Shown here piece by piece: positions 7,582 to 42,700 of a stretch of DNA of 64,000 nucleotides (within the stretch, counting starts at the first letter, position 1; every line of letters begins with the position of its first letter). Source of the stretch: Macrostomum lignano (Eukaryota). The stretch is taken from assembly GCA_002269645.1 (NCBI GenBank), contig NIVC01000672.1:419029-483028 (forward strand). Reading direction: 5' to 3'. The notes beneath the pieces are model-generated. The model had not been told where the DNA came from, searched no databases, and was given only the letters and a program-made list of their open reading frames with translations. Both the position numbers and the translations under genes were made by a program.

Positions 7582-8361
7582 CTACTTTCTTTTCTTTTTC
7601 TTTTTCTTATTTTTCTTTTTCTGGTTCTGCTGCTGCTGTTGGCTCTGCTGTTGTTGCTGAACTGCTTTACCAGCTGCTCTCTGCTCAGCCGGAGCCAGGA
7701 AAAACTTTTTGTCCATTCGCACCAGCCAAGAGGACACCTGCCGCTTATCGGCTGAATTTTTGTGCGCCATTTCGTAATTGACTCGCTCGATCATGGACAC
7801 GACGTCTTCTTTCTTACCGAACTCCTTGAACACCGAGCATAGCGAAGTGATGAATCGAGACCCCTTTGACCCCTCTCTCGCACTCGTCTCTAGTGGCACA
7901 GTTGAGTGCGCCACAATGACGTCCTCGTATTCAGGCAGAGGTTCGCGCTCGCTTTGCTCGTCCGACACACCGTCGCTATAGTTGCGACACACCTGGAAAA
8001 TCAGCAGCTTCGGTTTATCGGTTCTTTTTCCGGCAAACTTTTGTAGAATATCTTTTTCTTGTACGTAAGCATCGTCGGATCCGGACTGGTGTCCTATTAT
8101 ACCGTGAGTCATCAGTACAAGAATAGCAACGTCTTCTTCTAAGACCAAATGACCTATTTTTTCACGAGTCAGATTGGTTCTGATTGAAACACAGAATCCC
8201 AATTCAGTGAACACTTTTAACAGTCTCTGAGTGTCCTTCTCGGAACCCAAGCGATTGCCATGTCTGCCGAATATGAGATTGTTGATGATGAGCACGCGGG
8301 TGCTGGGATCGGCAGTTGAATAGCTTTGTTCCTCACCTGTCTGCGTCAGCTTCCACAGTCT

Positions 8362-8430: not shown

Positions 8431-9056
8431 CACAGTCTCGCTGCTGTTTTCTCTCTCTTCTCTACGAGAGCATTCCGGCACGGGTATTTCAGGATCGACT
8501 TTGATTGCACAGTGAAATTTAGCCAAGCCGCATTTTTTGCAAACTTTCTTCGGTGACGATTCTTTAAGATTGTCTCCACAGCGGACGCAATCTTTGCAGT
8601 TGACGCAGATCAGTGGTATGTGACTTGCACTGTCTTTGCACGTGTCCTTGCAACTGCAGTCAGCGGCCGCCGAATCGACGGCTGCCGAATCGACAGCACA
8701 AGAGCACAGCGTGACTGGCTCAGATTTTTCAAAATTATCGAGGAGTGTTTTTACTCGTATCTTTCGCTTCTGATCCTCATTAGTTTCAATTTTAATCCAA
8801 ACGTCACCATGTCCGTCAATTTGTTGAAAGTCGTTATCTAGCTTGTCGCTAGCAACTACAACTGCATACTGCGAAGTGTCTGGTACTTGGATTTCTCCAT
8901 ACTCGTATTCAGCGTGCACTTCCCATCCATTCGCCTCCAGAGCAATTTTCTTCTGCTTCTTTTTCAGCGTTTCGTTCGTTGAATTCTCTGAATCCTTCTT
9001 GACAAGGATGAGAGCTGAATGACGTTTGGTTTCCGATGATGGTGGCTTTGATTGAT
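7582..9056 (-). CDS. Multi-caspase gene 1, terminal exon: degenerate module, Cys-rich linker, poly-Ala, then a catalytically intact caspase domain
   Basis: Acceptor tttcatttcAG (9058-9057); the frame stays open 9054 to 7582. Caspase motifs: RVLIINN...NRLGSEKD...LGFCV...LMTHG (His, plus-strand 8104-8106)...KPKLLIFQVCR (Cys, 7987-7989)...VIVAHST...GSRFITSLC...VN...QVSSW...KKFFL. Confidence 0.9.
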
Positions 9057-15480: not shown

Positions 15481-16638
15481 AAGCCGTTGAAAAGCCGTTC
15501 TTGACGATGCTGTTGATGGGGCAGATCATTGAAGCCACATCCGTTTTCCCGGCACCGAAGTAAATTGCTGAGCACAGAGCGAGCACGAAGCGGCTACCCA
15601 GGGGGGAACAACCATCAGCAGGGGTTGATTCAGATCTGACTATGATCAGACCGCTTTGTTTGTGAAAGTGCAAGGCATTAGTTGTACCTTCAGACCCTAA
15701 ATCAGTAACTTCTCCTGTAGTTCGATTATTTAATATGTTTCCAGCTTCACCAGAAGCATTGAAGCGTTTTCGCAGATGAACAACAACCAGCCTGTGCGCG
15801 TTAGAAAAACAACCTTCTTTGCTAATTTTAGTCAGCAGGTCGTTAACTGCTTTTTTTTCGGTCTCTTCCGCCAGGATTACTACCACATAGGAGGCACCGA
15901 ATTCCTCTGACGGCTTGATGTCATATTTATCAAAATATTTCACGGATTTAGTTTCGCACTGGTCAGGTGATTTGTATTTGGCGTGCTCAAGTGCATCTTG
16001 CAGATTTGCAACGTCCATCCTTGCACTTCTGCCCAAATCAGATGTGTCTTCGTGTAGCGTTTTGCTCACAAGAATGAGAGCGCGATTCTTGTGCTCTTCG
16101 TAATTATTGTAGATTTCTGGGATTTTTTCTTTCAGACGATTCCTCGAAAACTTAAACCCGGGTTCGCCGGTAATATAGTAGAATTGTTCCGTTTTAGAGC
16201 TGTTATTAAAATTTCCAACTGCGTCTTTCAGATTTTCGTTTTTATCTAACATGTCTTTGATCGCTTTCAGCTCACTTCCATCTGTGTCTTCTTTGCCTGC
16301 TTGACATAGGAAATTCACTTTTGTTAATTTTTGTTTATCCTTTTCGTCACGCAGCTTCTCTCTCAGCTTCTTGCTTCCACAAACAATCAGAAGTCTTTCC
16401 GACTGATCACTTCCGCAACTATCGAATGCCTCGAATAGATTCTTCAGTCCATCATTGAGTTTACTACTGCTAGAATGCACTACAAGAACTGCTTGCTTGA
16501 GTGCTTTGGTAGCTTCGACCACTTCCTTACATTTACCAATGTCACCAGTTTCCTCCAACTGAAAATTGCAGTCCCTCAGGTACTGTTTGAACTTCTCACA
16601 GTTTATCTGGTCGATATTAAATAAGAATGCCTTCCTGT
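15481..16638 (-). CDS. Multi-caspase gene 1, proximal part of the exon encoding a degenerate N-module and a catalytically dead pseudo-caspase (interrupted by the LINE)
   Basis: Acceptor tgcatttcAG (16640-16639), phase 1. Motifs RALILVS...MDVANLQDALEHAKY...YVVVILAEE (no His-Gly)...RLVVVHLRK (no Cys)...GSRFVLALC...DVASMICPIN. Confidence 0.85.
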
Positions 16639-16761
16639 CTGAAATGCAGTTCAAATAGAGCAGTTGCGTTAAAAAGTTTGCGTTTGGGGCTGATATCAGA
16701 GCAGTAACGCATCCGGTTCTGCACAAAACACCATCGCCCAATCATTCAAGCGGATTCTCAC

Positions 16762-20677: not shown

Positions 20678-20829
20678 CTGCAAATCAGATTGTTGAATTG
20701 GTTAGAATTGGATAGAGGCCAGGACTGGCTAATAGAGAGATGGGTTGAAGCGCACGGAGCCCCTCGGCATACTGTATGTCTCCATGCTGATGACAGCTGC
20801 TAATGAAGCCATCATCAAGCCCCTCGGCA

Positions 20830-21384
20830 TACTGTAATTGTTGTAAAAATTGTCGATTTCTGGGATTTTTTCTTTCAGACGATTCCTCGAAAACGTAAAC
20901 CCGGTTTCGCCGGGAATATAGTAGAATTTTACCGTTTTAGAGCTTTTATTAAAATCTCCAACTGCGTCTTTCAAATTTTCGTTTTTAATTAACATGTCTG
21001 CGATCTCTTTCAGCTCACTTCCATCTGTGTCTTCTTCGTCTTTTTTACATAGGAAATTCACTTTTGTTAATTTTTGTTGATTTTTTTCGTCACGCAGCTT
21101 CTCTCTAAGCTTCTTGCTTCCACAAACAATCAGAAGTCTTTCCGACTGATTATTTCCGTAACTATCGAATGCCTCGAGTAGAATATTTAGTTTATCATCG
21201 AGTTCACTACTGCTACGATGCACTACGAGAACTGCTTGCTTCAATGATTCCTCAGCTGACTTCTCAGCAAGCAGATTCGTAAATTCATCAATGTTATTAC
21301 ATTCTTTCAACTGAAAATCGCAGTCCTTCAGATACTTTTTGAAGCCTGTATTCGATGTGATATTAAAAAAGAATGCTTTCCTGT
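20830..21384 (-). pseudogene. Truncated third copy of the multi-caspase exon (N-module only)
   Basis: Close paralog of 16638-16090 (RKAFFFN...KQAVLVVH...ERLLIVCGSKKLREKLRDEK...FSRNRLKEKIPEI) with the same acceptor (21386-21385). It breaks off at ~20835 into the upstream repeat unit. Confidence 0.8.
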
Positions 21385-21505
21385 CTGAAATGCAGTTCAA
21401 AAATATTTGCGATAGCAAGTGAGGGCTGGGGCTAAATATCGGAGCAGTAACGCATCCGGTTCTGCACAAAACACCATCGCCCCAATCATGCAAGCACATT
21501 CTCAC

Positions 21506-21559
21506 CTGTGACTGCTGAAGTTGAGTCGCCTTGTTTGGGGTCCGTTAAACGAGATCCAA
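21506..21559 (-). CDS. 54-bp phase-1/1 microexon (GSRLTDPKQGDSTSAVT)
   Basis: aatttgcAG|tt gga tct...gtc aca g|GTGAGA, in frame with exon 21384. Confidence 0.6.
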
Positions 21560-26757: not shown

Positions 26758-26828
26758 CGTCTGCCCTCGCCTGCAGTTATCTCCATCTATCTTGAATTTC
26801 TTTGCCGGCGACCAGAATTGTCTTGTCA

Positions 26829-27093
26829 TTATTGATTATGATTATGATTTTGATGATGGCGATGATGGTGATGGTGATAATGGTGATGGTGATTGTGATG
26901 ATGATGATGGCGATGGTGATGATGGTGTTGGTGATGGTGATGATGATGATGGCGATGATGGTGATGGTGATGGTGATGATGATGATGGTGATGGTGATGA
27001 TGTTGATGATGGTGATGGCGATGATGGTGATGGCGATGGCGATGATGATGATGTTGATGAAGGCGATGATAATAATGGTGATGATAGTGATGA
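26829..27093. repeat. Imperfect (GAT/GGT/GGC)n trinucleotide repeat
   Basis: Directly visible. Confidence 0.93.
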
Positions 27094-28744
27094 TATACTT
27101 TCTCAGAAATAAAAAGAACGCAATGAAGCAGCAGATTCTGTGGAATAAATAATGATTTAACAACAATCGGTTCTACACACGAACTTATGATAAAAAGTAT
27201 TATATAACAAAAAAACTGATTTATAGATTTTTATTATTGAAATTAGTTTTCTTTGATTATAGATAATCATAAATAGAAAGCAGAATAGCAAAGACTCAAA
27301 CCAGCACCCGTGCAGTAAAGTACATATTTGAAATGAGTAGCTACCAGCGTATTTTGAATCAAAAGACAAAATAAAGTAGCTCCGACACCTTATTAGGTTT
27401 CTTCACGATTCTTTAATAAAATTGAACTTTGAATCCCTTGAAAAAAATTGTCAGAATCAAAAAATTGGTGGGGATCACGCGGTGCTTAATTCCCTGCTAC
27501 CTGCTTAGAGACGATTCCTTGAGCACAGCACAGATGTTAACTCTGCCGAATAGAAACTGCTCAAGGAAGTGGCGTGCACGGGTGTTCCAGCCCAGGACTG
27601 AAGCACCAGGGGAGAATGGCATTAGTAAAAAAGTGTATTAATGGCAGAGGAAAATTATTAACTTCAATTTTCAGCCTATAAAATAGCTAAATGTAACCAA
27701 CAAGCAAAAACTACAATTGCAAAGTTATAAGAAGCAAAATCAGACACAAAAGGTGCTCAATGGGGGGTTTAAAGCCAAGAAAGTCTCACACAGACACGCG
27801 ACACATGCTAGCTAAATATAATGTAAGGTAATGCGATATAATATATAATAAATAACATAATAACAATAATAAATTATAACTGCAATATAATGCAGAACAG
27901 GTGACAATAATAAATAATTAATTTATGTAAGAGCCGCCATTATCTTAGAGAGAACTCATTTTTCAAATTTGAAAACATTGAACTATTTGATAGAAACACT
28001 GTTTCATAAAAATCTGCTTATAAATACCATTTTTACTGGAGAATCAATCAATTGCTCAGCCTTTAATAAACTTTGTACTCTTTCCCCGCCCTGTTAAAGT
28101 GTTAACGTTCATGCTTTACGTAGAAGAATGAGTTGATAAGATTTATTTAAAATGATATTTGGCAATGACGTCTGCTAGTCAACTGATTTTTGTTTGTGTG
28201 CAATTGCGTGATAGTATGGCAATGCGAAAATGAAACCTGCACAACTATACTCATGTTTAATATACATATGCTGGGGCTAATTGATTGGGGAACCAACTGA
28301 AATGATAAACTATGTTTTCTATGTTTTTAATTATCTGATATAAAGATTCCAATCGATTTTTATTTCATTTTCACAGAGTATACTTAGTGATAGCAATAAC
28401 TGATGAATTAGCAATCGAAAAAGCAAGTCTTGTAAGCTGAGCATTTGATTTGATCTCCAGAGTAAGATTAAGCATTGAATGAGAGCGTAAACAAATCATG
28501 CAAATATTTTTGAGTCAAGATTACGCCACGCTCGCTCACACCACTATCAAATTGCGGCACTGGAAAAATCTGAAAAGCCGCGTGATTAACATTATTAAGC
28601 TTGGCCTGGTTTTAAGATATGGTGTGAATGAGCATCAACACTATAAGCAAAGGGTAAAGGACATGCTTTGTCAGTCAGTTGTAGCTATTATTAGTTTTAT
28701 TTGCTTTTAAATTGTTCTGGCCTTGCCTCAGGCTCCTCAGTCCA

Positions 28745-30129
28745 TCAGGCAACTGAATTGTCTTCATTGTCGGCATTGTTGTCCGCATTGTTGTCCGCAT
28801 TGTTGTCCGCATTGTTGTCCGCATTGTTGTCCGCATTGTTGTCCGCATTGTTGTCCGCATTAACCAACCAGAACTTCTCTGTTGTTGTGGCTGTCCAACA
28901 CGGCAGCTGCCACTGGTGGCTATCTGTAGCAAGATGACTAGGCTCATCAGGATAATTAGGCTTTTCATAATAGTGCATCATGCGATAGTTGACGAATTTG
29001 CTGATCTCAATAACATCCAGTTGATTATTCGGCATGTCACGAACATAATCAGCAAAGGCCTGGCAGAGGGTGAGAACAAACCTGCTACCACAACCGTCCT
29101 TTCGACTACTATAGTCTCCAGGAGCGGTGGAGTAAGCAACTATCGTGTTAGCCGGTATTTTACAGACGACATTTCCTTCAGCACCGTGGTGTCTGCAGGA
29201 TTGAATGACTACAAGCTTCTGCTCTTTAATGTTGTTTAGGGATTCAAACAGATCGTTTTCCTCAACGCTTTTGTCATCAACTCCCGTAATTTTTCCGAGC
29301 TCTCCGTGTGACATAAAAACGATAACAGAGGTTTTGCTGTGATCTTCAAGTTTGGAAAACTCCTCAACCACTGTTCGCAAAGCTTCGGAGCTCAAATTGT
29401 GCCAGATGGAAATTCGGTAGTAAAACTGCTGGAAAAGATGACGCAGAACTGCAGTATCGTACAGACTGGCCAGTCTGTCATCCTCACATTTAGGGAATAT
29501 AGCGTTGCTGACTATCAGGAGGCGTGGGCGCTTCCCCTCTGGTTTTGAAATAGTGCTTTTCCCTTCAAAGGATTCTTTTACTTCTTCGTCGTGTCCAACA
29601 TTCGAAAAAACCAAAGCTTCATCTGTATTAAATGTTTCTTCGCGTCGTCGCGGAAGCGGTATCACAGGGAATTCTTCTCCACCCTGGAGTTGTTCTGCTT
29701 GCTGTCTGATTTTAACTTTATCCAGCCACTTCTGAATACATTCAGCGATTACTTTTGCACTGTTACGAACGCTAGCGTGAAACATTTTGTCACTGATTTT
29801 CGTTACTTGCTGTTCATTCTGCGATCCGATTTCGCATGAAAAAACAACAATTTTCTTAGCATTGCTTGCTTCTTCTTCAAGTTTATTCTTGAATTGCTGC
29901 AGGTCGCGATACGTAGTGTAGACAAGGAGAGCCAGAACGAACTTCGCATTACATGTGACTGCACTGGGGGTGCAGAATAGCTCAAACTTTTCTGTTATCT
30001 CAACTTCCTCTGCCCTTACCTGGTAGCCGCTGGCAGCGAGAAGTTTTTCGAAATCTTGAGCTTTCTTTAAAATTTCCCCATGGTTTTGTTGGATGCCGCT
30101 GTCCAACAGTATCAGCGCCTGGTGGGAAC
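28745..30129 (-). CDS. Multi-caspase gene 2, terminal exon: degenerate module plus a catalytically intact caspase domain with an (ADNN)n tail
   Basis: Acceptor tctttttAG (30131-30130), phase 1, in frame with ORF 28745..30106. Motifs RLLIVSN...DRLASLYD...VFMSHG...KLVVIQSCR...IVAYST...GSRFVLTLC...VN...QLPCW..TTEKFWL. A 12-bp repeat lies at 28769-28860. Confidence 0.9.
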
Positions 30130-30206
30130 CTAAAAAGACAATTTGACACGTAAATTATTGTGCAAGAAATTTATAACTTCGCCATGAAAACAAAATTTTA
30201 TTTTAC

Positions 30207-30236
30207 CTGGTTGAAAATCGTTTGGTCTAGGCTTAT
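30207..30236 (-). CDS. 30-bp phase-1/1 linker microexon of multi-caspase gene 2 (D-KPRPNDFQP-G)
   Basis: aaatttcAG|at aag cct aga cca aac gat ttt caa cca g|GTAAAA. Introns 30563-30237 and 30206-30130 are both GT-AG and keep the frame. Confidence 0.75.
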
Positions 30237-30563
30237 CTGAAATTTAGAAGTTTCATAAAGTGACTCGGGGAATTCACATGTATTTTTTAACTTATTGAAA
30301 TTTTTTAAACTCGAATTTCAAATTGTCAAGCTCAACCATCGCGTTCCAGAAAACAATACCCAATAGGAGACCCCATCATCCAGTATTGTTTCAAGCACTC
30401 AAGAGTTATTATCTGAACTGTATGAACTGTACAAGCAGTCGAAAGGAATTTCATCATATGAGCGTAACGCTACGCTTGCAGGATACGAGAATACGCTCGT
30501 ATTCTCATTTTTACAGAAGCGTTTGGTAACTTCTGAAAGCCTAATTGGAACAATTCTACCAAC

Positions 30564-32018
30564 CTTTTTTTTCTTGCGAAGAATTTCCTTTTCCATTCGA
30601 CTTTTCGTGCGACGGCTGCTCCGCGTCTGTCTTGCACAAGAAGAAGTTTCTGTGCGTTAGCCACGTCCATCGTGGCTTCTCATCGAAACCATCCATTGAG
30701 GGGCGGCGAAATGATTTGTTGACTTCATTGATTAGTGAAACCACGTCCTTACTATCGGCATGCTTGTAATATGCAGTACAGATGCTTTTGACCAGTTCGC
30801 TGCCAGTTTTATCGCAAAGAGGCTCAGTATACCTGCACGTGACCAGGCCAGCTTGGCTGTGATGTGATTCATCTGTATTCATGGATATTCTAAGATACTG
30901 CGCCAGCTCCCGGCAATTATATGGGATATTCGTCCGTCTAGCGTCGGCCTTTTCATTTGTGCCTCCAGTGGATTTTTGCTCACCATCTTTTATTCGTAAG
31001 TTGAATATCACGAGCTTTGGAGCTGACCGATTGCCAATGTTTTTTAAAGCACCGATAATTTCGGTTTCAGTTACTGTTGAGCCGTCCGAGCACTCAATTT
31101 TACCGTCTTTTTCAAAAGCAGTGATGACGAGAATCCACAGGTTGTGATGCTCCTTAAACTCTTCAGCCGTACGAATCAGCTCGCTCGCCTTCAGGTTGTT
31201 AAATTGCACTACACCAAACAGCATGTTCTCAAACAAGTAGCACAGTCGGTCACTGTCTATCTTTGAACCTTCGAGTGCGTCAGCGCCACTGGTGGTCACG
31301 CAATTGACAACAAGAGCAGTTGGTTCGCCATGGCGCTCATAGTAACCCATTTTATCTTCGTTTATTGTTGCGTCTGGCTTCATCTGCTGCAAATCCTGAG
31401 TTCTGAGCAGTTCTGAGTCCTTTTCAAGATCATCTCTACTTTTCTCATCAAATCGGCAAGGCTGTCGAAAGCGCACGAATTCGGGTGTGCCGTATTTGAG
31501 ATCAACAATCCCTTTTTCCTTGATGGAAGTTTTGAATGATTCTTTACGAATAATTGACCCGATGCAATTCGTCTGCCAATGCAGAGTTTGATGTTCCTGC
31601 AAGGACTTGAAAAAATCTTCGATCCGATCAGCCGCTGCAACTTTATACAAGCAGAAAATGTTTTTGTAACTTTCTTGGTAGAAGCTCTCAGAAAAGTCAA
31701 CCGAAGGATCGAACGACCGGTTGCTGTCAACCTTGCAGTAGACGAGCAGGCAGCGCTGCGTTTTGGAGTCTTTAATGGCTTCGAGAGTATTCTGTAAGCT
31801 CAGCGAATTGCCGATTTCCTCATCATTCACGACAACAACAACTGAAAATCTTGTGCCCGAAAGACGCTCGATCAGCTGGTTTAGCTGGAGCTGACTGGAA
31901 TCCGGATTCGAGGAAAAGCCGCAGCTTTTAATGAATTCAAAATATTCATTTCCGGCTTTTGCTTCACGAGATTCCGAAGACAAGTTGCTGCTGAATACCG
32001 CAACGCAGCGTTGTTCAA
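30564..32018 (-). CDS. Multi-caspase gene 2, exon encoding a degenerate N-module and a catalytically dead pseudo-caspase
   Basis: Acceptor ttttgcatttcAG (32020-32019). Motifs PTALVVN...EGSKIDSDRLCYLFE...WILVITAFE (no His-Gly)...PKLVIFNLR (no Cys)...GSELVKSIC...DVVSLINEVN...PRW..LTHRNFFL. Donor AG|GTTGGT at 30564|30563. Confidence 0.87.
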
Positions 32019-32711
32019 CTGAAATGCAAAACAGGTGAAGCTGCGGTAAAGCGTAAGCAGTACGCACGGTGTCACAAACTCATTGATACGCTTGTAACTA
32101 ATTTCTACCTGCTATCTTACTAATTTCGGTGTACATCCTGAACTTCTAATCAGAAAGAAGGTTCAGTTTGTTCGGCGCGATGCTACCCAACAATGTCCAA
32201 TTTCCCGAAGCAAAAATTTCCAATTATGTTTTTTATCTCGCGCTTGCAATTCCATTCTCGCAGGTACATCACTGCAGCGCTATAGGTTAAGATGGGTAAT
32301 ACGTTGTTCCTTCACTATTTATTGTTGGTTGCTTGCCATGAGCTAATGAAAAAATTAATAATTTACATTTCACAGGTTGGAAAATATTGATTATCTCCTT
32401 TCTGCTCAAAAAAGGCTCGTCCACACCGCTATCAACGAGTAAAAAATGTGTGTGATTACATGACTGATGTACTCTACATAGATCAATGTACAATGCACAC
32501 TGATTTACCCGTTTGATGGCAGTGCGGACTGGCCTGGCCTCATGAATATGCTCTCGACACAAAGTCTGGGAAGTTAAGCCTCGATTGAATTTGGATAAAA
32601 ATATCCCTATTGTGGCGGCCTGCGGTCTGCGATTGGTGCAGCGCTCGTGCACCGGCACTCTCAGCTACCCCCAGCCGTACACATAGAGGCCAGATTAGGT
32701 TTGAGGCGTGC

Positions 32712-32791
<80 letters not shown>

Positions 32792-33313
32792 GAGCAACTG
32801 CAAAGCAATATACGGTAGCGATGACGAAATATCTTAGGCTCTGAGAAGCCAATGCAGTCTGCGGATCCCCAGATTGCTGGCATGCCAGGAAAAATGCCAA
32901 GCAATGCGGCCGTCAGCGCGTTTGGCCGTCAAGAAAGCTGAGCTTTCTTTCCATGGCCATAAAATTCACGCGAACAATACACAGCAGACGCCCACACAAA
33001 TACGGAGCTTTCTTAGAAAAAGCTTTTTCGCCACATTCTTCCGAACCAAAACCGAGTTTCTTGTCCCATTCTAACTAGCCAATGACAATGCGCAATGGTA
33101 ATGCATCACAGTCCCTGATGGCACATTGCAAAACAGAAGACGCTATTTGAGGCTTTAGCTATTCAGTGAGAGTCGGTGAGGCTGCGTGTGTAAAAAGCAT
33201 TTAAAGAGCTTCAACTAAATCCAGAGTAAGGTCGACAGACTACTTGTGATAATGAATAATACCTGACAGCTGAGTTCACTGCTACTCATTAAGTCAAAGT
33301 AATTCATGCTCAC

Positions 33314-33388
33314 CTTGGTCCTTTTGTGGAGTGACTCCGCTATCTTTAGGAGGCGAGCTCTGTGGAATCGATGGCGGATCGGTCTCAC
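33314..33388 (-). CDS. 75-bp phase-1/1 microexon upstream of gene 2
   Basis: tattgcAG|gt gag acc gat ccg cca...gac caa g|GTGAGC. Confidence 0.6.
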
Positions 33389-33723: not shown

Positions 33724-33774
33724 CTGTGGCCGTTGAGTCGCCTTGGCTGAGATCCGTTAATATATCAGCATCAA
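33724..33774 (-). CDS. 51-bp phase-1/1 microexon upstream of gene 2
   Basis: gatttgcAG|tt gat gct gat ata...gcc aca g|GTGAGC. Confidence 0.6.
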
Positions 33775-35312
33775 CTGCAAATCAGATTGTTGAATTGGTT
33801 AGAATTGGATAGAGGCCTGGACTGGCTAATAGAGAGATGGGTTGAAGCGCACGGAGCCCCTCGGCATACTGTATGTCTCCATGCTGATGACAGCTGCTAA
33901 TGAAAGCCATCATCAAGCTCTTCGTCTCCAAAGGCACACTAGTCTAGTTTTCGGATGGAGTCTCTGCCCTGATTCTAATTTTGTACTACATTTATAACAC
34001 AAGAACAGTGTTGCAATAGAATGCACTGCCAACCGACATTTACTGAAGTAGGCTCACCGGTTTGTGGTGCAGCCATAACTCGTGAGGCTCCTGTACCGGA
34101 AGGACTTTCCGTGCTATTTAATGTCACGGAAAGGTGCGTCTTTAGCGTTCAAGACACAACAGGCGTTGCTTGGGTCAAAGCAGTCAAACTGCAATATGCT
34201 TTATTTTGCTCCGGAACAGAACAGAAGCCTCTCTCCTGCACTGCACTGCTCAGAGAACTCTCTCCCGCGCAAGCACTTCACTGTTCAAATAGATCTGGAG
34301 GAAAAGCCCTTTATATGGCAAGCCACTTGAACGCGGCTGACTCAGCACCCACTTCTCTTTACTGGACACGCATTCGGCTGGTAAAACTGTGCAATAGTAG
34401 AGGAATGAGGGTGAATGTACAGAGGGGGGGGGGGCAGATTTTTCTCTCAGAGAGATCCTGTTGCTCATACTCGTATTATATACACTATGTAAGAGATTTT
34501 GAGTACTGTGGGACGTTGGATAAAGCAAGTTCGCCTTTTGTGAACAATGAAGGATACGCGCGTGCAGTTATGCTGATGAGGGTTTTTTTGTAAAAGGTCA
34601 TTTTTAGCAAGAAAAATGTGAAATTTGCTAGCAGCACATTTTTCAATCGTACTATGAACAGACTGGGTCATCCTCTCCACTACTCTCAACAGAGTTAGCA
34701 TCAGTCTCAAATTCTGAACTATTTACGATTCTCTCTTCCCAATCCACATATTTGCACATATAACTCCCCAATTTATTTTTAAGTCATAAATTTCTTTATT
34801 TTCTGGGGGGTACATTTTGATTTCAGAATTGTCTCGATTTTTTATAGAGACCTCTTCAATTGTTATTCCAAATATGCTGTTTAACTTGTGGAAGCTGATA
34901 GCAAATATTCTCAAGGGTGTCAAAAACATCGAAAGTGTGTCCCGCCATTTTTAAGTAATTTTCTGAGGTCGTGGGGGTTGTGAATTTTTACTGTTGTAAA
35001 TTTTTTTATAGTAGTATTGAAAATGTCTAGTCTAGGGCACTTTTTTTACATTTTTTGAGAAATAACAATACTCATATAGTAGTACTATATGTCTCAACAC
35101 TTTATGCATACCTCATCGATTACACCATTCAATATTATTCTTTTACTTGTTTTGATACAACTGAAAACGTGTCCGACATTTGTTGCCATTTTAAGTGATT
35201 TTTCTACCCTGAAAATGTTCGACACATCGAAAAGCACCTTTATTTAATGATTGGAATTTAAGCTTTTTTGCGTCATGCGTCATGCGTCAGAGACGAGTAT
35301 CAAAGTCCTATA

Positions 35313-36311
35313 TGTAGTGAGCCGCTAGTTTATTGTTAGGCGTCGCCCTTGTCAGCCGCTCCCTTGCCCTCCCTTTGGGTTGCTGTCTGCCGCTGGTCAG
35401 CTTCCCGTCCCTTTTTCGTTTGCCTGTTGCCCCCCGTGTCCCTTTCCGCCCTGTTGCGTCTCCGTTCTCAGCCCTCAGTCTCTCGACTGTGGGCTGTCGC
35501 TGTTTCGCTTCCATCCTGTTTTCCTCTGTCATGTGAGCAAGTCACATGACAGCTCTTGCGTTCTTTGAGTCTTAAAGTGCAGTAAACATGTTTACTGCAC
35601 TCGTTGGCCCTGTTTACCGGGTGAGTCACATGCTTTCGGACCCCTCCCTTTTCTAAGGAGAGGAGTGACTCATGTTGCTAAAAATAGCAACTGAGTCACA
35701 GCCATGTGTACTCTGCCGGGGACCCTCAAGTGACGTCAGTTCTAAAAATAGAACAAGTCACGAGGTCTTCCGCGCGCTTGTACCCTGCCTGAGACTCTCG
35801 AGTGACGTCAGTTCTAAAAATAGAACAAGTCACGAGGTCTGGAGCGTGGGAATTTCCCGGCTATAAATAGGAGCCCTCTCCCCCTTGTTTCCGTCAAGGA
35901 GTCTTCCTTCTGTTCAACCTCGAGTTCTACGTCCGCGTGTGACTGAGTCCCGAGTGTCCGAATCTTTGCGCACATTGATTCTGTTCCTATTGCTCCGACT
36001 GAGACCTGACCAAAACCAACCCAAGTTTACGAGAGGCTAACTCCGCCCTCCCTGTACCATCCAAGCCCGGCAGGTGCTGCTGACGAGACGCCTTATACGT
36101 GAGCTGCAAATCTGCACGTCGTGCTGTGTTCGTTGACTTCATTATTTCGTTCCGACGGGAAGCTCACCTCACCGAAGGCCGAGACCTGAAGGAACTGGTG
36201 GCAGCACTACCTACGCTACTGAGAAAGTTGAGAGAACTTCCCACTGAAGAGGCCCGAGTCTGAAGGTAATCCGCAAGGGCCGAAACCGGGAAGAAACCCC
36301 ATTGTACTTCA
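35313..36311 (+). repeat. 5' LTR (999 bp)
   Basis: tgtagtgagcc...attgtacttca. I noticed only two compensating C-homopolymer length differences from the 3' LTR. Confidence 0.97.
35578..35867 (+). promoter_or_regulatory. LTR U3 enhancer/promoter: motif cluster and TATA box
   Basis: Palindrome tgcagtaaacatgtttactgca (35578-35599). TGAGTCA/TGACTCA at 35622, 35666 and 35692. TGACGTCA at 35731 and 35803, inside a ~44-bp direct repeat. GGGAATTTCCC at 35848-35858. TATAAA at 35862-35867. Confidence 0.65.
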
Positions 36312-37579
36312 CTGGTGACGCAGCGGTGAGATCCGACTACGACACACCCAAGCCAACCGCTCTTTCGAGAACGACATCGGCCAGCGACTACGACGAGTTC
36401 AACATGTTCAACGAGCGAGACGAGAGCCGGTGCAGCAGCCGGCTGGATCAGCACATCAGCAGTTCGAGGCCTGCGGCAGCAGAAGCCGCCGCAGCAGCAG
36501 CAGCGGTCAACGACTTTGGTCAGCAGCCAACGCCGAGGCAAGGTGCGAGAAGCGACGTGTCCGACGACCCGCCAGACGAGCTTCTGCAAGGCCTGGACAA
36601 CATCGGCCGGAACATCACGCACCAGGACGTGAGGACCATGATGGCAGCTCTGCAGCAGCAGATGGAGCGGCCTGTGAGTAAACAAGTTAAAATTGTAAAG
36701 TTTACTCCAAGTCAGGACATTCATGTCTGGCTTGCCGCGTTCGAGCAGCGTTGCGAGATGGAGCGCATCGTCGACCCGTTCGAGATGAAACAACACCTCA
36801 TCGCGAGTCTCGATTTGGCTACTGCGTATCCAGCCTTGCTTGGTATGAATCTTCCGCGTTTCGCCAGCTACGGGGAGGTCAAGCAACGTCTGATTGAGCG
36901 ATTTGCCCGTCATGGTGGTGCTGATGAGTATCGAGAACTGTTGCGACGTCGTCAACAAGGCAAGAATGAGTCAGCAGAAGAGTTCGCTGACGCCCTGAGA
37001 ACTCTGGGTGAACGTGCATATCCTCGAATGCATCCTGAAGACCGCGAGAAGGAGATTACTGATCAATTTCTTGCTGGTATCCGGACGACTCCAGATCTGC
37101 GCGAACGGCTGTACTGGGTTCGCCCGAACAATCTTCTTGCTGCGATTCGAGAGCTACGACGACTAGAAGGCGCCAAAGAATTGGCGCACCGATCTGCTCA
37201 ACCCCCGGTTAGGATGTTGGACGGGGAGGAGGACGGCGACCCGAAACCCGACGTCACCGCCCAAGCCTTACCGACTCTAACCGACTTGATTGAGAAGCAG
37301 CAGCGAATGCTGGATCACCTGGTGCAGCGTGACCAACAGCAGGTAGCCAGCCCGCCAAAGAGAGCTATAATCTGCTATAGCTGCGGACAGCCCGGTCATC
37401 GCAACACCCAGTGCCCGATGCGCCAGAACCAGGGAAACGGCCAGGCGGAGAGCGACAACGGCACCGCCCTCCGCGAGGTCCAAGCCCAGGCTACTTGGCA
37501 GACTCCGAGAGGTCACCAGAAGAAGAGGATGTCGGCTGTGCAGGCGCCAATGCCCAGTCCGACAGTCGCTCGTCAGTAA
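36302..37579 (+). CDS. Gypsy Gag with CCHC zinc knuckle
   Basis: Retrotransposon-gag-like core (WLAAFEQRCE...ESAEEFADALRTLGERAYP) and CYSCGQPGHRNTQC. The true start is probably a downstream ATG (~36403). Confidence 0.9.
   Translation: MYFTGDAAVRSDYDTPKPTALSRTTSASDYDEFNMFNERDESRCSSRLDQHISSSRPAAAEAAAAAAAVNDFGQQPTPRQGARSDVSDDPPDELLQGLDNIGRNITHQDVRTMMAALQQQMERPVSKQVKIVKFTPSQDIHVWLAAFEQRCEMERIVDPFEMKQHLIASLDLATAYPALLGMNLPRFASYGEVKQRLIERFARHGGADEYRELLRRRQQGKNESAEEFADALRTLGERAYPRMHPEDREKEITDQFLAGIRTTPDLRERLYWVRPNNLLAAIRELRRLEGAKELAHRSAQPPVRMLDGEEDGDPKPDVTAQALPTLTDLIEKQQRMLDHLVQRDQQQVASPPKRAIICYSCGQPGHRNTQCPMRQNQGNGQAESDNGTALREVQAQATWQTPRGHQKKRMSAVQAPMPSPTVARQ
36313..36335 (+). promoter_or_regulatory. 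Primer-binding site, tRNA-Leu-like
   Basis: TGGTGACGCAGCGGTGAGATCCGA begins 1 nt after the LTR. It resembles the complement of a tRNA-Leu 3' end (TGGTGGCAGCGGTGGGATTCGA) with a 2-nt bulge. Confidence 0.6.
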
Positions 37580-40500
37580 GTGACGCGGAGTGCGGAGGTT
37601 TCGTGGACACCTCCCCGAATCAAAAAATCCATGCGCGTGAGGCCGATCCGTACGTCACAGGTCGAGTTGCGAGTCGAGAGGTCCCTTTCTTGCTTGACAG
37701 CGGCAGCCGGAAAAACTTTCTTGGTTCGTCAACCTGGGCCGCTATTAGACGTCGGATGCCTCGTTGTATTATATCGCATGCTATTCCCGATTGCGTAACT
37801 ATGTATGATGGGACGCAGCTCCCACTTGCTTGTAAGGTGACCATTCCGGTGGAGTTCGGTGATGTCGTCGCGGACACCGAATTCCTCGTCACGGTCTCCG
37901 ATTGTGAAAATTTGCTTGGCGTATCGTTTATGCGAGAGCACTGCCAGAACTTGGACTTCGCTCAAGGAATGCTAACGTTCAACAATGGCACGTGTATCCC
38001 TGTTCGTTATTCGCATCGTGAGCTTCAAACCTGCCGAGTGTACACCTCCGAGAAGTGCACCCTGCCGCCTAGAAGTTCAGCGCTGCTTCCCGTCAGATTG
38101 GATGACGGCCACCCTGAGAATCGAGGATCGCCATCAATTGTCGAGCTGGTTAAGTCGAGGCTGCATCCCAGCTGCAACGCTCTGGAAGCAGCGCCTGCTC
38201 TGATGACGATGCCTGAAGGTCGCGGCTACATTGAGGTCGTCAACACCGCCGACAGCGAGGTGTTCCTGCAAGCCGGTATCCGTGTGGTGTTGCGACGCCA
38301 CTCCGAACTGCCGACCTGATGTACTGAGCGAGACGCCCGAACCTGAAGTGCGACACCTCCCGAAGAACTCTGAAGAGTCCAGCACAGCATGGCTAGATGA
38401 AGTCGAGATCAACAGCGAATTGTCCAAAGAACAACATCAAGAGTGCGAGATCTACTAGTCGAATGTCAAGCGGCCTTCTCCAAGCACTCGCTAGACGCCG
38501 GCCTGACTCACCTGGTGACCCACGAGATCATCTTGAAGGACCGGACACCAGTCGCGCTACCACCGCGCCGAATCCCGCCTCATCTGAAGGACAAGCTCGA
38601 CGCCCTGCTAGACGAGATGCTGGCGAAGCATATCATTCGCCCTGCCTACTCGAGCTACAATTCGCCAATGCTCATCGTGCCCAAGAAGGACGGCAACATC
38701 CGACTAGTCCACGACTTCAGAGCTCTCAACGACAGGTGTGTGTATCACCCGTATCCGCTCCCGCACATCCAGGAAACCTTCGCGAAGCTTCGTGGTGCTC
38801 AGTGGTATTCTAGCTTGGACCTTGCTCAAGGATTCTGGCAGATCCCGCTGCGCGACTGCGACCAGCACTTGACGGCATTCTCAGTAATCGACCGCGGCCA
38901 ATTCTGTTTTAACGTTCTACCGATGGGTCTCCACGATAGTCCCGGCAGCTTTCAGCGTTGCATCAATAAGCTCCTGGACGGCCTGACGCCAAAGACTGCG
39001 CTTGGCTACATGGACGACATCGTGGTGCACTCAGTGACTTTCGAGGAACAGCTGGATAACTGCGAACTGTACTCCAGCGCATCATCGCAGCCAACCTCAA
39101 AGTGAAACCGAAGAAGTGTCATTTGTTCCTCAAGGAGCTGCATTATTTAGGTCACGTCGTGACTCCCGACGGCCTGAAGACCTGTGAGGACAAGATTGCG
39201 CAGATCCGTGATTGGCCCGTGCCACAGTCCGTTACTCAACTGAGACAATTCCTAGGCCTCGCCAATTACTACCACAAGTTTGTCGACGGCTACGCTGGAG
39301 TGGCTGCGCCGCTGCATGCCCTGACGCGAAAGGACATTGGCAGCCTGCGGCAGCATTGGACTCCCGAGCATCAGCAGCGTTCGACACTTTGAAGAAGAAA
39401 TTGTGTTCTACTGAAGTTCTCGCTCTGCCTGAATTTAATTCTGATCCTGCTGTGAAGTTTGTCCTCGACACGGATGCCTCTGATATTCGAATAGGCGCTT
39501 GCCTTGGACAACTGCAATCCGACGGCGTCGAACGTCCAATTGCATTCTTTAGCCGTAAACTTCGCGATCCTGAGAAGCGCTACACGGTCACGAAGAAAGA
39601 GCTGCTTGCAATTGTGGACGCTATGCGACATTTCCGTCATTACTTAATCGGCAAGAAGTTTGAAGTTCGATCCGATCATCGGGCCTTACTGTGGTTACTG
39701 AACCAACTCAGGCCACAGGTATTTTAGGCCGCTGGATCGAACGCCTAAGCGAGTTCCGCTTCCAGCTCAACCACCGCAAAGGCAAGGACCACGCCAACGC
39801 TGATGCCCTGTCAAGAAGACCGGAGGGCCCGCCGATCTTCTTCGAGCATGGCCGACTGCTAGAGCAACCTGGTTCTACGCCCGACCCGGTGACGACCACG
39901 ACCTGGAACCGGATTTGGACCCGACACCCGAGGCCACTGCCAGAGCAGCCCTCCAGAAGACAGTCCACTCTCGCTGCTTGGAGGCCAAGACTGACCTGGA
40001 CGAAGACCTGGAAGCCACCGCGCCAGCAGCCTTCCAGCACGACGCCCACCGCTGCAGTCAACGCCTGGAGATCGGCCTGGACGACAACCAGAGGCCACTG
40101 CGACAACAGCCCTCTGCCGCGATGCCCATGCCGCCCGCTGCAATTTGGAGACCAACCTGGACGAAGACCTTGAGGCCACTGTGGACACAGACCTCCTTGA
40201 CGACGCCCAAGACTACAGGTCTCGGACTCTGGAGACGCCCACGGACCAAGATTCAAAGGCCACCGCACCAGCAGCCCTTCTGATGACGGCCCGCAACGCA
40301 ACTCCAGGCAAGCAATTTAACTACAACCCTACTGAGCCTTTCGCTGAGATTTCTCGCCGTGTTGACAGAGGCCAGAATCTCGCGCCAGCTGCAAGGTCGA
40401 AGCTCTGTCCCCCGGGCCGACAGACAGCTGCTCATCGCCTGTGCGGAAAGTCGAGTCCCCCTTTGCGACACCGCCCAGTGCTGGAGAAGACTCACCCAAT

Positions 40501-42130: not shown

Positions 42131-42700
42131 CCTGACGCCGATTACACGAGGACTTCCGATCCTGAAGTCGACAAACCGAAGAAGCGTCGGCGACCGCCCG
42201 ACGTCCCCGACGGCGCAGGACCCGCGACCCTGACGCCGATTCCCGAGGACGACCAGGACGACCCCGACGATGATGATGATGACGGCTACGACGCAAGGCC
42301 GGCCTTCCGATGGCACTCCCGGCCTTTGGCGATCCCGGAGGTGCAGCCAGGAGGTGGACCGGTCACGACACCAGCGAACCAGGCAAGTGCACTTCGGCGT
42401 GAGCCAGTGCCGTATGGTGAATGTCATTTGCATGAGCCTGTTCTTGATGCGTCTACGCCTGTTGTTTCTTTTCCACCCGTTTCTGCTCCCGCCCCCAGTG
42501 CTGCTTTATCTGTGGTCCAGACCCCTGGGCCGTCGCTATGCACCACTCCGGTGGAAGCGTCAGTAGGAATTGTAGATGCCGGTAGGCCGGCTAGGAACCG
42601 TAAGCAGCCTGAGAGGCTGATTATTAATCCTAGGGCTAAGACTTATGTTAGCCGCACCGCCCGCATCCGCGCACAAATCGAAACGCATTTCAGCGCAGAA

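What the first reader, a model, noticed from the sequence alone, without database searches (positions are those of the whole stretch)
29640..32018. Possible four-module protein: the regions before each caspase domain also look like eroded caspase p20 folds
Seen: the segment opening the terminal exon is homologous between the two genes (HSALILVKK...ETLKKKQKKIALEANGWEVHAE versus HQALILLDS...EILKKAQDFEKLLAASGYQVRAE). It echoes the caspase pattern ALII.N...L...F..LG[FY].V, with KKIVVFSCE resembling PKLFIIQAC. The N-modules (RKAFLFN...FKQYLRDCNFQL...QAVLVVHS...ERLLIVCG; RCVAVFS...FEFIKSCGF...SVVVVVN...QRCLLVYC) show the same alternating strand pattern. I see no DED, CARD or death-domain signature. 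Inference: the prodomains are dead caspase-hemoglobinase-fold modules, giving a 3-dead + 1-active array built by internal exon duplication.
Basis: inference. Interest (0 to 1): 0.7.

Follow-up and report, generated by a model that had tools for sequence, protein, structure and literature searches.

The report
Four-module flatworm caspase gene
This stretch of Macrostomum lignano (flatworm) DNA encodes most of a roughly 1,000-residue caspase in which one working protease domain follows one clearly dead caspase domain and two far more decayed modules that probably, but not certainly, also descend from caspase domains.

Summary
The window is Macrostomum lignano DNA. Exon 4 (32018-30564, minus strand) encodes module M1 plus a dead caspase domain, D2. 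A 30-nt mini-exon joins it in frame to the terminal exon (30129-28745), which encodes module M3 plus an active CED-3/caspase-3-like domain, C4. The inferred protein is 1004 aa, and paralogue gene models show the same layout.

M1 and M3 have no Pfam match, including CARD, DED and DD. Taken pairwise, they resemble caspases no more than chance allows. M. lignano paralogues change this. They define an "M module" family that always sits in front of a caspase domain. Its profile matches the N-terminal (p20) half of a 161-domain caspase profile (hhalign E 5e-6; N-half alone E 5.5e-7). The nearly invariant M cysteine falls on the catalytic cysteine column.

Three caveats apply:
- The same profile matches de novo designed Rossmann proteins about as well.
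- The C-terminal halves show no p10 signal.
- The AlphaFold models were poor (pLDDT 54 and 44) and drew only flavodoxin-like Foldseek hits.

The window's M1 is a solid M-family member. Its M3 is only weakly linked. Verdict: partly supported. This is a new variant of the known pseudo-caspase-plus-caspase tandems, and of moderate interest.

The parts
34058..34076 (-). Gene A exon 1: ATG plus MAAPQT, donor G|gtgagc, phase 1
   Evidence: Sequence reading; it matches the N-terminus of paralogue gene model P0001.
33725..33775 (-). Gene A exon 2 (51 nt, VDADILTDLSQGDSTAT), phase 1-1
   Evidence: tblastn with the P0001 N-terminus; splice sites read.
33314..33388 (-). Gene A exon 3 (75 nt, GETDPPSIPQSSPPKDSGVTPQKDQ), phase 1-1
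30564..32018 (-). Gene A exon 4 (1455 nt, phase 1-1). It encodes M1 and the dead caspase domain D2 in a single exon.
   Evidence: ORF. Acceptor at 32018. Donor AAG|GTTGGT. 94% identical to P0001.
31438..32018 (-). M1_A, about 194 aa (VEQRCVAVFSS...LLVYCKV...). A member of the M-module family.
   Evidence: No Pfam hit. Scores 34.2 bits, E 6.8e-12, against an M profile built only from out-of-window paralogues. hhalign against the single-unit M modules gives E 9.3e-5.
30625..31344 (-). D2_A, a pseudo-caspase domain. The dyad is lost: ITAFE in place of SHG, and FNLRIKD in place of QxCRG.
   Evidence: Pfam PF00656 E 3.7e-7, 30.5 bits against a cutoff of 21.4. hhalign against the active domains gives 93%. 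Alignment. Best PDB hit is CED-3, E 6.6e-7.
30207..30236 (-). Gene A mini-exon 5 (30 nt, DKPRPNDFQP), phase 1-1. It bridges exon 4 and the terminal exon in frame.
   Evidence: Splice sites read. An equivalent 30-nt exon lies in the B-type paralogue of locus L001. P0001 includes such an exon, and P0002 skips it in frame.
28745..30129 (-). Gene A terminal exon. It encodes M3 and the active caspase domain C4, and ends in an (ADNN)n repeat before the stop codon.
   Evidence: ORF; acceptor at 30129.
29612..30129 (-). M3_A, about 170 aa (GSHQALILLDS...KKIVVFSCEIG...). The most eroded module, with only a weak link to the M family.
   Evidence: Homologous to M3 of gene B. Scores only 5.4 bits against the out-of-window M profile. 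M3win against the caspase profile gives E 0.009, in register. AlphaFold pLDDT 44.
28856..29533 (-). C4_A, an active-looking caspase domain (FMSHG, VIQSCRHHG).
   Evidence: Pfam PF00656 E 1.8e-28. PDB hits: CED-3 at 1.8e-13 and caspase-3 at 1e-12.
16085..16642 (-). M1_B, the M1 module of the second (B-type) gene.
   Evidence: 15.7 bits, E 3e-6, against the out-of-window M profile. AlphaFold secondary-structure order is b1 a1 b2 a2 b3 a3 b4 a b5 a a b.
15488..16096 (-). D2_B, a strongly eroded pseudo-caspase domain. It is cut off by a LINE insertion; its tail lies at 9586-9473.
   Evidence: No Pfam hit, but hhalign gives 52-76% against caspase domains through the GSRF...LC p10 motif. Tail located.
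8692..9033 (-). M3_B, a short M3 module, followed by a Cys-rich insert.
7687..8307 (-). C4_B, the active-looking caspase domain of gene B (LMTHG, FQVCRN).
   Evidence: Pfam PF00656 E 4e-32.
20834..21388 (-). M1_C, a third, truncated copy of a B-type M1 module.
   Evidence: ORF; 72% identical to M1_B.

Best explanation
The region encodes the first three modules of a 1004-aa Macrostomum lignano caspase with the layout M1 - dead caspase (D2) - M3 - active CED-3/caspase-3-like caspase (C4).

M1 and M3 belong to a lineage-specific "M module" that sits in front of caspase domains in the M. lignano paralogues recovered here. I think M is most likely an old, strongly eroded copy of the caspase domain. 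Its N-terminal half keeps the p20 pattern (b1-a1-b2-a2-b3-a3-b4) and the cysteine at the end of b4. The histidine, the substrate pocket and any recognisable p10 sequence are gone.

Inferred history: a caspase gained a pseudo-caspase prodomain by internal duplication, giving the [M + caspase] unit encoded in one exon. That whole exon was then duplicated in tandem, and the upstream caspase copy died, giving [M1+D2] + [M3+C4].

Inferred mechanism (not shown): there is no CARD or DED adaptor domain. D2, and perhaps the M modules, would act as built-in partners that pack against C4 through the caspase dimer interface, as cFLIP-L does with caspase-8. This would hold the single active site in a restrained or primed state until the N-terminal modules are removed or rearranged.

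The confidence of 0.6 refers to the caspase ancestry of the M modules. I rate the four-module architecture itself at about 0.85.
For: **Architecture**
- Splicing is in frame through a 30-nt mini-exon, and all introns are phase 1.
- Paralogue models P0001 and P0002 join the ORFs.
- P0005 is M1-D2-M3-C4, P0007 is M1-D2-C4, and P0046 and P0074 are M-caspase. All are M. lignano proteins.
- The [M + caspase] unit occupies one exon in P0046 and P0005.

**D2 is dead and C4 looks active:**

**The M family is real**
- M1-type against single-unit M gives E 2.9e-7. M1-type against M3-type gives E 3.7e-6.
- The window's M1_A scores 34 bits and M1_B 15.7 bits against a profile that excludes them.

**M against caspase**
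- hhalign of the 15-sequence M profile against a 161-domain caspase profile gives probability 86%, E 5e-6, over 95 collinear columns from b1 to b4. The M Cys, present in 12 of 15 sequences, lies on the catalytic Cys column.
- The N-half alone gives 92%, E 5.5e-7.
- Null controls stay far below the observed scores of 35-45. Column shuffles reach at most 22, and reversed profiles score 12-17.5.
- CheY and Spo0F controls score no more than 20.
- hmmsearch with the M profile hits the start of about 25 genuine caspase domains, best E 4e-6.
- phmmer with one M3 (from P0003) hits an active caspase domain at E 6e-5.
- Against the whole PDB, caspases are six of the eight natural proteins reported at E<=10, and the best six of them (E 0.03-0.34). 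This is the level at which the genuine dead domain D2_A hits caspase-3.
Against: - The best PDB hits of the M profile are de novo designed Rossmann 2x3 proteins (2L69, E 1.6e-6). These cannot be homologues. A fragment of that design scores E 1.6e-4 against the caspase profile and E 4.3e-5 against the M profile. An idealised b-a-b pattern alone can therefore produce much of the signal.
- The M1-only profile does not hit caspases (hhalign E 0.17; PDB search). The M3-only profile finds nothing in the PDB. The caspase link rests on the single-unit and out-of-window M3 modules and is transitive for the window's M1.
- The window's M3 modules are only weakly tied to the family (5.4 and 0.3 bits).
- The C-terminal halves show no p10 similarity (E 0.015 or worse).
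- Pfam's caspase model does not see the modules at E<=10.
- AlphaFold models were of low confidence (pLDDT 54 and 44). Their Foldseek hits were CheY, flavodoxin and TIR at E around 1e-3, with no caspase among the 50 matches listed.
- I had no transcript data. The mechanism is pure inference.
Confidence: 0.6

Rival explanations
1. The M modules are a lineage-specific Rossmann-like or flavodoxin-like alpha/beta prodomain with no ancestry in caspases. The resemblance is convergence on an ideal b-a-b pattern (hydrophobic strand, amphipathic helix, G-aromatic-x-V strand).
For: - De novo designed Rossmann proteins are the top PDB hits of the M profile, and they score E about 1e-4 against the caspase profile too.
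- Foldseek on the only half-usable model (M1_B residues 1-100, pLDDT 55-80) returns CheY, flavodoxin and TIR.
- A helix is predicted between b4 and b5, as in flavodoxin-like folds.
- No p10 signal is found.
- M1-only and M3-only profiles find no caspases.
Against: - The M-to-caspase hhalign score (43.7 over 95 columns) exceeds the design control (26.7-31.3 over 34-59 columns) and the natural CheY/Spo0F controls (20 or less).
- The conserved Cys falls on the catalytic Cys column.
- No response regulator, flavodoxin or TIR chain is reported at E<=10 among 177,635 PDB sequences. Six of the eight natural proteins that are reported are caspases, which is the very family encoded next door.
- Caspase-domain duplication has demonstrably happened in this family (D2).
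Confidence: 0.28
2. The four-module protein is an artefact of gene prediction. The two long ORFs would be two adjacent genes, each one M module plus one caspase domain.
For: - Each long ORF is a complete [M + caspase] unit, like the single-unit paralogues P0046 and P0074.
- ORF A runs into a stop codon 8 nt after the proposed donor.
- P0001 and P0002 are both odd or truncated models.
- No transcript evidence was available to me.
Against: - ORF B has no ATG before residue 126 of its 469-aa open frame, and it begins at a good acceptor.
- The donor, 30-nt mini-exon and acceptor keep the frame. They are conserved in position and phase in the diverged B-type gene of L001.
- Two independent annotations join the parts.
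- P0005 has the same two long exons separated by an intron of about 73 nt, and it is annotated as one 1017-aa protein.
Confidence: 0.07
3. M1 and M3 are not independently folded domains. They would be long, fast-evolving linker or prodomain sequence whose strand/helix periodicity is incidental.
For: - AlphaFold confidence is low (pLDDT 44 for M3_A, and below 50 for residues 104-186 of M1_B).
- Divergence between paralogues is extreme (12-25% identity).
- M3 of gene B is shortened and carries a Cys-rich insert.
Against: - Motifs are conserved across M1, M3 and single-unit modules, including a nearly invariant Leu and Cys.
- Profile matches between subfamilies span about 130 columns.
- Regular b-a-b elements are predicted.
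- The low pLDDT is expected from alignments of only 2-3 sequences.
Confidence: 0.05

Closest known systems
Coral caspase-X (Acropora millepora AmCaspase Xa-Xd; PMC4715348)
   Same: One polypeptide carries an N-terminal inactive caspase domain followed by an active one. In that paper the inactive domain is proposed to pack against the active one as in the c-FLIP/caspase-8 pair, and deleting it increased killing in mammalian cells. The paper also mentions an A. digitifera prediction with four caspase domains.
   Different: - Caspase-X was reported as restricted to corals; this is a flatworm family, so the two are probably independent.
- Here two further modules (M1, M3) are so eroded that Pfam does not see them.
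- The repeat unit here is [M + caspase] encoded in one exon.
- I did not test sequence relatedness to caspase-X.
Mammalian caspase-16 (PMC12198278)
   Same: The prodomain is predicted to be a caspase-like fold, made by duplicating caspase-coding exons. [quoted passage not shown]
   Different: Caspase-16 has two modules, not four, and its pseudo-domain is still recognisable. The authors call that prodomain unique among caspases known so far. The Macrostomum family would be an invertebrate parallel with further rounds of duplication and decay.
cFLIP-L (CFLAR), the human pseudo-caspase (PMC7586951)
   Same: It is a catalytically dead caspase-fold domain that regulates an active caspase by heterodimerising with it. 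This is the mechanistic model for D2, and possibly for M, acting on C4.
   Different: cFLIP acts in trans and is recruited through DED domains. Here the partners are fused in cis and no death-fold domain is present.
CED-3 / caspase-3/7 effector-type caspases
   Same: C4_A's best solved relatives are CED-3 (E 1.8e-13) and caspase-3 (E 1e-12). The His and Cys motifs are present.
   Different: - Gene A's C4 has a very short intersubunit linker with no Asp (SCRHHGAEGNVVCKIP).
- About 780 residues of non-catalytic modules precede it.
Flavodoxin-like / CheY-like / TIR and de novo Rossmann 2x3 folds
   Same: They share the three-layer a/b/a b-a-b pattern. They are the top Foldseek hits of the low-confidence models, and the designed proteins are the top HMMER hits of the M profile.
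   Different: - No natural member of these families is reported at E<=10 in the PDB sequence search.
- CheY and Spo0F do not match the M profile in hhalign.
- No Pfam TIR or response-regulator hit is found.

Membership tests
Caspase, peptidase C14A (for C4_A, 29533-28856) | Significant match to the caspase domain model over its full length | tested here: met
   PF00656 E 1.8e-28, 100.2 bits against a cutoff of 21.4, profile positions 4-232 of 233. CED-3 and caspase-3 are the top PDB hits.
Caspase, peptidase C14A (for C4_A) | Catalytic His (SHG) and Cys (QxCxG) in place | tested here: met
   FMSHG and VIQSCRHHG align with the dyad columns of the family alignment.
Caspase, peptidase C14A (for C4_A) | Asp-directed protease activity | not testable with these tools
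   This needs an enzyme assay. Gln of QxC is present and Arg candidates for the S1 pocket are visible by eye, but I did not check them rigorously.
Pseudo-caspase domain (for D2_A, 31344-30625) | Caspase-domain homology with loss of the catalytic dyad | tested here: met
   PF00656 30.5 bits, above the cutoff of 21.4. hhalign against the active domains gives 93%. His is replaced by Phe (ITAFE) and Cys by Arg (FNLRIKD) in the alignment.
Tandem inactive + active caspase proteins (caspase-X / caspase-16 type) | An inactive caspase domain N-terminal to an active one in a single polypeptide | tested here: met
   D2 and C4 are joined in frame. The same holds in P0003, P0005 and P0007. Transcript confirmation is not available.
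Caspase-hemoglobinase fold (for the M modules M1 and M3) | Statistically supported sequence or profile similarity to caspase domains | tested here: inconclusive
   **Family-level M profile**
- Against the caspase profile: E 5e-6, or 5.5e-7 for the N-half, well above the nulls.
- A de novo design control reaches E 1.6e-4.

**Window modules and sub-profiles**
- M1-only is not significant.
- The window's own modules alone give E 0.009 or worse.
- Pfam gives no hit.
Caspase-hemoglobinase fold (for the M modules) | Three-dimensional topology: six-stranded sheet in order 2-1-3-4-5-6 with an antiparallel b6 | tested here: inconclusive
   AlphaFold pLDDT was 54 (M1_B) and 44 (M3_A). Foldseek top hits were CheY, flavodoxin and TIR at E about 1e-3, with no caspase among the 50 matches listed. 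The C-terminal halves were unmodelled.
Caspase-hemoglobinase fold (for the M modules) | A p10-like C-terminal half (b5-a4-a5-b6, with the GSxF motif) | tested here: not met
   The C-terminal halves show no significant match to the caspase profile in any subfamily (E 0.015-0.72). The only hints are by-eye similarity of DTDGSELKAI to DKTGSELVKSI and TEQFYYI-type strands.
Caspase-hemoglobinase fold (for the M modules) | A remnant of the catalytic dyad | tested here: inconclusive
   Cys is conserved in 12 of 15 M sequences and is aligned by hhalign to the catalytic Cys, with a 2-residue deletion. No His is conserved at the end of b3.
M-module family of M. lignano caspases (defined here) | Match to a profile built from paralogues outside this window | tested here: met
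   M1_A scores 34.2 bits (E 6.8e-12) and M1_B 15.7 bits (E 3e-6). M3_A scores only 5.4 bits and M3_B 0.3 bits, so M3 is met by position and N-terminal motif only.
Death-fold prodomains (CARD, DED, DD) | Pfam match, or an all-helical six-helix pattern | tested here: not met
   No Pfam hit at E<=10. The predicted secondary structure is alternating strand and helix.
TIR / CheY-like / flavodoxin-like domains | Sequence-family match to a natural member | tested here: not met
   No Pfam hit. No such PDB chain at E<=10. hhalign against CheY and Spo0F gives E 0.017-0.77. The only support is fold-level Foldseek similarity from low-confidence models.

The most novel reading that the evidence does not exclude
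Macrostomum lignano has evolved a family of self-contained, single-chain caspases built from successive generations of caspase-domain duplicates: M (oldest, almost erased), D2 (recently dead) and C4 (live). The dead copies would replace CARD/DED adaptor recruitment by forming intramolecular pseudo-dimers with the one active site. This would be a cis-acting FLIP-like switch, in a phylum reported to lack FADD (PMC11463336).
Probability: 0.25. Interest if true: 0.6.

Novelty: new variant of a known kind. Interest (0 to 1): 0.45.

Why it matters
Caspase activation normally depends on adaptor-driven dimerisation through CARD or DED domains. Fused pseudo-caspase partners are known from only a few cases: cFLIP in trans, coral caspase-X and mammalian caspase-16.

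A flatworm family with one, two or three non-catalytic modules in front of a live caspase would give a natural series of decay stages, because single-unit, three-module and four-module paralogues sit in one genome. That series could be used to ask how dead protease domains are kept and reused as regulators.

The family also shows that unannotated "long prodomains" in invertebrate caspases can be cryptic caspase copies. The 2024 survey of lophotrochozoan caspases reported no such prodomain in platyhelminths (PMC11463336). If the M modules prove to be an unrelated alpha/beta domain, the finding shrinks to a lineage-specific prodomain plus an ordinary pseudo-caspase/caspase tandem.

Tried and rejected
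1. **Pfam on whole ORFs and isolated modules**. Only the caspase domains hit. The weak Glycos_transf_1 and SCO4226-like hits fall below their cutoffs and I discarded them.
2. **Pairwise BLASTP and shuffle z-scores** for M against M and M against caspase using window sequences only. Only M3_A against M3_B is significant.
3. **hhalign with shallow in-window profiles** and an HMM of the eight local caspase domains against the modules. At best 5 bits, with 2 of 300 shuffles reaching the score.
4. **The search for homologous proteins.** Exon-4 products of genes A and B gave one hit each. The 12-sequence M alignment gave nothing at E<=10.
5. **The search of protein representatives** was meant for the M3 profile. 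The alignment carried full-length P0002, so the profile had 595 positions and the hits were mostly caspases. By luck this delivered the paralogues that made the analysis possible.
6. **MAFFT alignments of A-type against B-type M1** are unstable; I obtained three different registers. I therefore did not use mixed alignments for AlphaFold.
7. **AlphaFold and Foldseek** on M1_B and M3_A gave low confidence and generic flavodoxin-like hits. I treat these as uninformative, not as refutation.
8. **PDB sequence searches** with the M1-only profile, the M3-only profile and two single M sequences found no caspases.
9. **C-terminal halves of M against the caspase p10 region** gave nothing.
10. **TIR idea.** No Pfam or PDB sequence support, so I rejected it as a family assignment.


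Full report
**Source and setting**

The window is genomic DNA of the free-living flatworm Macrostomum lignano. The product of the long minus-strand ORF at 32079-30556 is 94% identical to BOX15_Mlig027753g1 (P0001). Every further relative I recovered is also an M. lignano protein.

The caspase genes lie between a DNA polymerase theta-like gene (helicase and family-A polymerase domains, 50139-60280, minus strand) and a string of retroelements and minisatellites.

**Anatomy of the gene under the finding (gene A, minus strand)**

Reading the splice sites against the paralogue model P0001 gives six exons:
- 34076-34058 (ATG, MAAPQT)
- 33775-33725
- 33388-33314
- 32018-30564
- a 30-nt mini-exon at 30236-30207
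- 30129-28745

All introns are phase 1. The coding sequence is 3015 nt, or 1004 aa.

Exon 4 encodes a roughly 194-aa module (M1) and then a caspase domain. Pfam still recognises that domain (PF00656, 30.5 bits, E 3.7e-7), but it has lost the dyad: ITAFE in place of SHG and FNLRIKD in place of QxCRG.

The terminal exon encodes a roughly 170-aa module (M3) and then a good caspase domain (E 1.8e-28) with FMSHG and QSCRHHG. Its nearest solved relatives are CED-3 and caspase-3.

**Is it one protein?**

ORF A ends in a stop codon 8 nt after a good donor (AAG|GTTGGT). ORF B has no usable ATG and starts at a good acceptor. The mini-exon keeps the frame.

The diverged B-type gene in the homeologous locus L001 has the same arrangement, with its own 30-nt phase-1 mini-exon. 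P0001 includes such an exon, and P0002 skips it in frame.

Paralogue P0005 (1017 aa) carries M1-D2-M3-C4. Its two long exons are separated by an intron of about 73 nt.

I had no transcript data, so I rate the four-module architecture as well supported but not proven.

**The second gene in the window (gene B)**

Gene B has the same plan:
- M1_B at 16642-16085
- an even more eroded D2_B, which Pfam does not detect but hhalign links to caspases through the p10 motif
- M3_B at 9033-8692
- an active-looking C4_B at 8307-7687

In this haplotype its D2 exon is split by a 5.9-kb LINE flanked by a 15-bp target-site duplication.

**Checking the observation**

- The opening of the terminal exon is homologous between the two genes (BLASTP E 7e-5, z 5.3).
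- The strand/helix alternation is reproduced by DSSP on the AlphaFold models.
- No CARD, DED, DD, TIR or any other Pfam family is found in M1 or M3, even at E<=10.
- With the window's sequences alone, the caspase echo is not above chance. Pairwise z is at most 2.6, shallow hhalign probabilities are below 2%, and a local caspase HMM gives at most 5 bits.

**What changed the picture**

A profile search that I had intended for M3 turned into a caspase search, because the alignment carried full-length P0002. It returned 150 proteins. Among them were M. lignano paralogues with the same unannotated modules:
- P0005: M1-D2-M3-C4
- P0003 and P0154: D2-M3-C4, with an N-terminal remnant
- P0007: M1-D2-C4
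- P0046 and P0074: a single M in front of a single active caspase

A joint alignment of 15 modules is coherent. It shows a hydrophobic b1 (ALIF-like), a D/N-Y-x-x-F-L-x-x-x-G-F-x-V motif (a1 to b2), a V-rich b3, and an LL-h-h-C strand. The Leu and Cys of that strand are nearly invariant.

Profile-profile links tie the subfamilies together:

| Comparison | hhalign E |
|---|---|
| M1-type vs single-unit M | 2.9e-7 |
| M1-type vs out-of-window M3 | 3.7e-6 |
| the window's M1_A alone vs single-unit M | 9.3e-5 |
| B-type M1 vs single-unit M | 1.5e-4 |

I also built an HMM solely from paralogues outside this window and its allelic locus. It scores M1_A at 34.2 bits and M1_B at 15.7 bits, but M3_A at only 5.4 bits and M3_B at 0.3 bits.

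M1 is therefore a firm member of an "M module" family. The window's M3 modules are assigned mainly by position, between D2 and C4 as in P0005, and by the shared N-terminal motif.

**Is M a decayed caspase domain? Evidence for**

- The M profile against a profile of 161 caspase domains gives hhalign probability 86%, E 5e-6, over 95 collinear columns from b1 to b4.
  - The M motif lies on the caspase D...L..lF..LgF.V motif.
  - The conserved Cys lies on the catalytic Cys column, with a two-residue deletion.
- The N-terminal half alone gives 92%, E 5.5e-7.
- Column-shuffled profiles reach scores of at most 22, and reversed profiles 12-17.5, against observed scores of 35-45.
- hmmsearch with the M profile hits the first 65 or so residues of about 25 genuine caspase domains, best E 4e-6 in a set of 154.
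- One M3 (from P0003) hits an active caspase domain by plain phmmer at E 6e-5.
- Against all 177,635 distinct PDB sequences, eight natural proteins are reported at E<=10. Six are caspases, and they are the best six (E 0.03-0.34), aligned at the start of the large subunit. This is the level at which the genuine dead domain D2_A hits caspase-3.

**Is M a decayed caspase domain? Evidence against**

- The very best PDB hits of the M profile are de novo designed Rossmann 2x3 proteins (2L69, E 1.6e-6), which cannot be homologous. A fragment of that design scores E 1.6e-4 against the caspase profile and E 4.3e-5 against the M profile. An idealised b-a-b sequence pattern accounts for a good part of the signal.
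- The M1-only profile does not see caspases, and the M3-only profile finds nothing in the PDB.
- The C-terminal halves of the modules show no p10 similarity in any subfamily.
With alignments of two and three sequences, AlphaFold reached pLDDT 54 for M1_B (residues 1-100 at 55-80, the rest below 50) and 44 for M3_A. Foldseek returned CheY, flavodoxin, TIR and similar domains at E about 1e-3, with no caspase among the 50 matches listed.

Flavodoxin-like and caspase folds share the 2-1-3-4 strand order of the modelled part, so I read the Foldseek result as uninformative, not as refutation.

I put the probability that M is caspase-derived at about 0.6.

**Origin**

M and its caspase share a single exon in the single-unit gene P0046, in P0005 and in both genes of this window. 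The exon boundaries are all phase 1. D2 is clearly a copy of C4 (hhalign 93%), and M1-type matches M3-type.

The simplest history is a tandem duplication of a whole [M + caspase] exon, followed by death of the upstream caspase. This is not four separate duplications. If M is itself a caspase relic, an earlier round made the [M + caspase] unit.

**Mechanism (inferred, not shown)**

No adaptor domain is present. By analogy with cFLIP-L/caspase-8, with the proposal for coral caspase-X (PMC4715348) and with caspase-16 (PMC12198278), the dead domain(s) would pack against C4 in cis through the dimer interface. They would either restrain or pre-organise its active site.

Gene A's C4 has a short intersubunit linker with no Asp. 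This fits activation by conformational pairing, as opposed to linker cleavage. Asp-rich linkers between modules could allow the N-terminal modules to be removed.

**Novelty**

Tandem inactive-plus-active caspases are known: caspase-X, including one four-domain prediction, and caspase-16, whose authors call its caspase-like prodomain unique among known caspases. The 2024 survey of lophotrochozoan caspases notes only a kinase-like prodomain in M. lignano and no other unusual platyhelminth prodomain (PMC11463336).

The M-module family and the four-module proteins therefore appear undescribed, within the limits of my three literature searches. I file this as a new variant of a known kind, of moderate interest.

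Noticed in passing
window 9590-15487 (LINE ORFs on + strand at 10046-15385): A LINE of about 5.9 kb (APE-type endonuclease, reverse transcriptase, RNase H) is inserted antisense into the coding exon of gene B, inside its dead caspase domain. A 15-bp target-site duplication, GCTTTTCAACGGCTT, flanks it. The upstream half runs into a stop codon straight after the duplication, and the rest of the domain resumes at 9586-9473. The homeologous copy in L001 is intact, so this allele of gene B is probably disrupted.
   Followed up: yes
window 20729-21544 (-), with N-terminal-exon-like pieces at 23533-23037, 20678-20202 and 18408-18325: A third, truncated B-type M1 copy runs into a minisatellite (SMPRGLMMASLAAVISMETY units) that is much expanded in L001 (10136-11434). 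Extra copies of the short N-terminal exons are scattered between the genes. The locus looks like a messy segmental duplication.
   Followed up: partly
window about 8430-8700 (-), gene B; also P0002 residues about 240-310: In B-type genes the second half of M3 is replaced by a Cys-rich stretch (CSCKDTCKDSASHIPLICVNCKDCVRCGDNLKESSPKKVCKKCGLAKFHC) with several CxxC pairs. It looks like a zinc-binding insert, but it has no Pfam match.
   Followed up: no
window 30207-30236 (-) and L001 about 28560-28590: A 30-nt phase-1/phase-1 mini-exon between the two long exons is conserved in position and length, but not in sequence, between A-type and B-type genes. One annotated model (P0002) skips it in frame. 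Exon 4 is also phase 1-1, so skipping it would give an in-frame [M3 + caspase] isoform.
   Followed up: partly
window 28748-28850 (-): Gene A's protein ends in an in-frame (ADNN)n microsatellite repeat just before the stop codon. The repeat count and units differ in the L001 copy.
   Followed up: no
window 36300-44077 (+): An LTR-retrotransposon-like element with gag-like, reverse transcriptase and integrase (zinc-binding plus core) ORFs, broken into several frames.
   Followed up: partly
window 50139-60280 (-): A DNA polymerase theta-like gene (DEAD helicase, Helicase_C and family-A polymerase domains), with minisatellite-rich introns. The same gene flanks the caspase locus in L001, which confirms that the two loci are homeologous or allelic.
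   Followed up: partly
window 323-7279, 26777-27166, 32540-32900, 48462-49419: Long minisatellite and microsatellite arrays give spurious ORFs of several hundred codons in several frames. GC content swings from 38% to 68% across the window.
   Followed up: no
proteins P0004, P0006, P0008, P0014, P0015, P0052, P0072: Many unrelated database proteins among the caspase hits carry two or three full caspase domains in tandem, some with both dyads intact. Caspase-domain tandems are therefore not rare in invertebrate predictions. I did not look up their source organisms.
   Followed up: no
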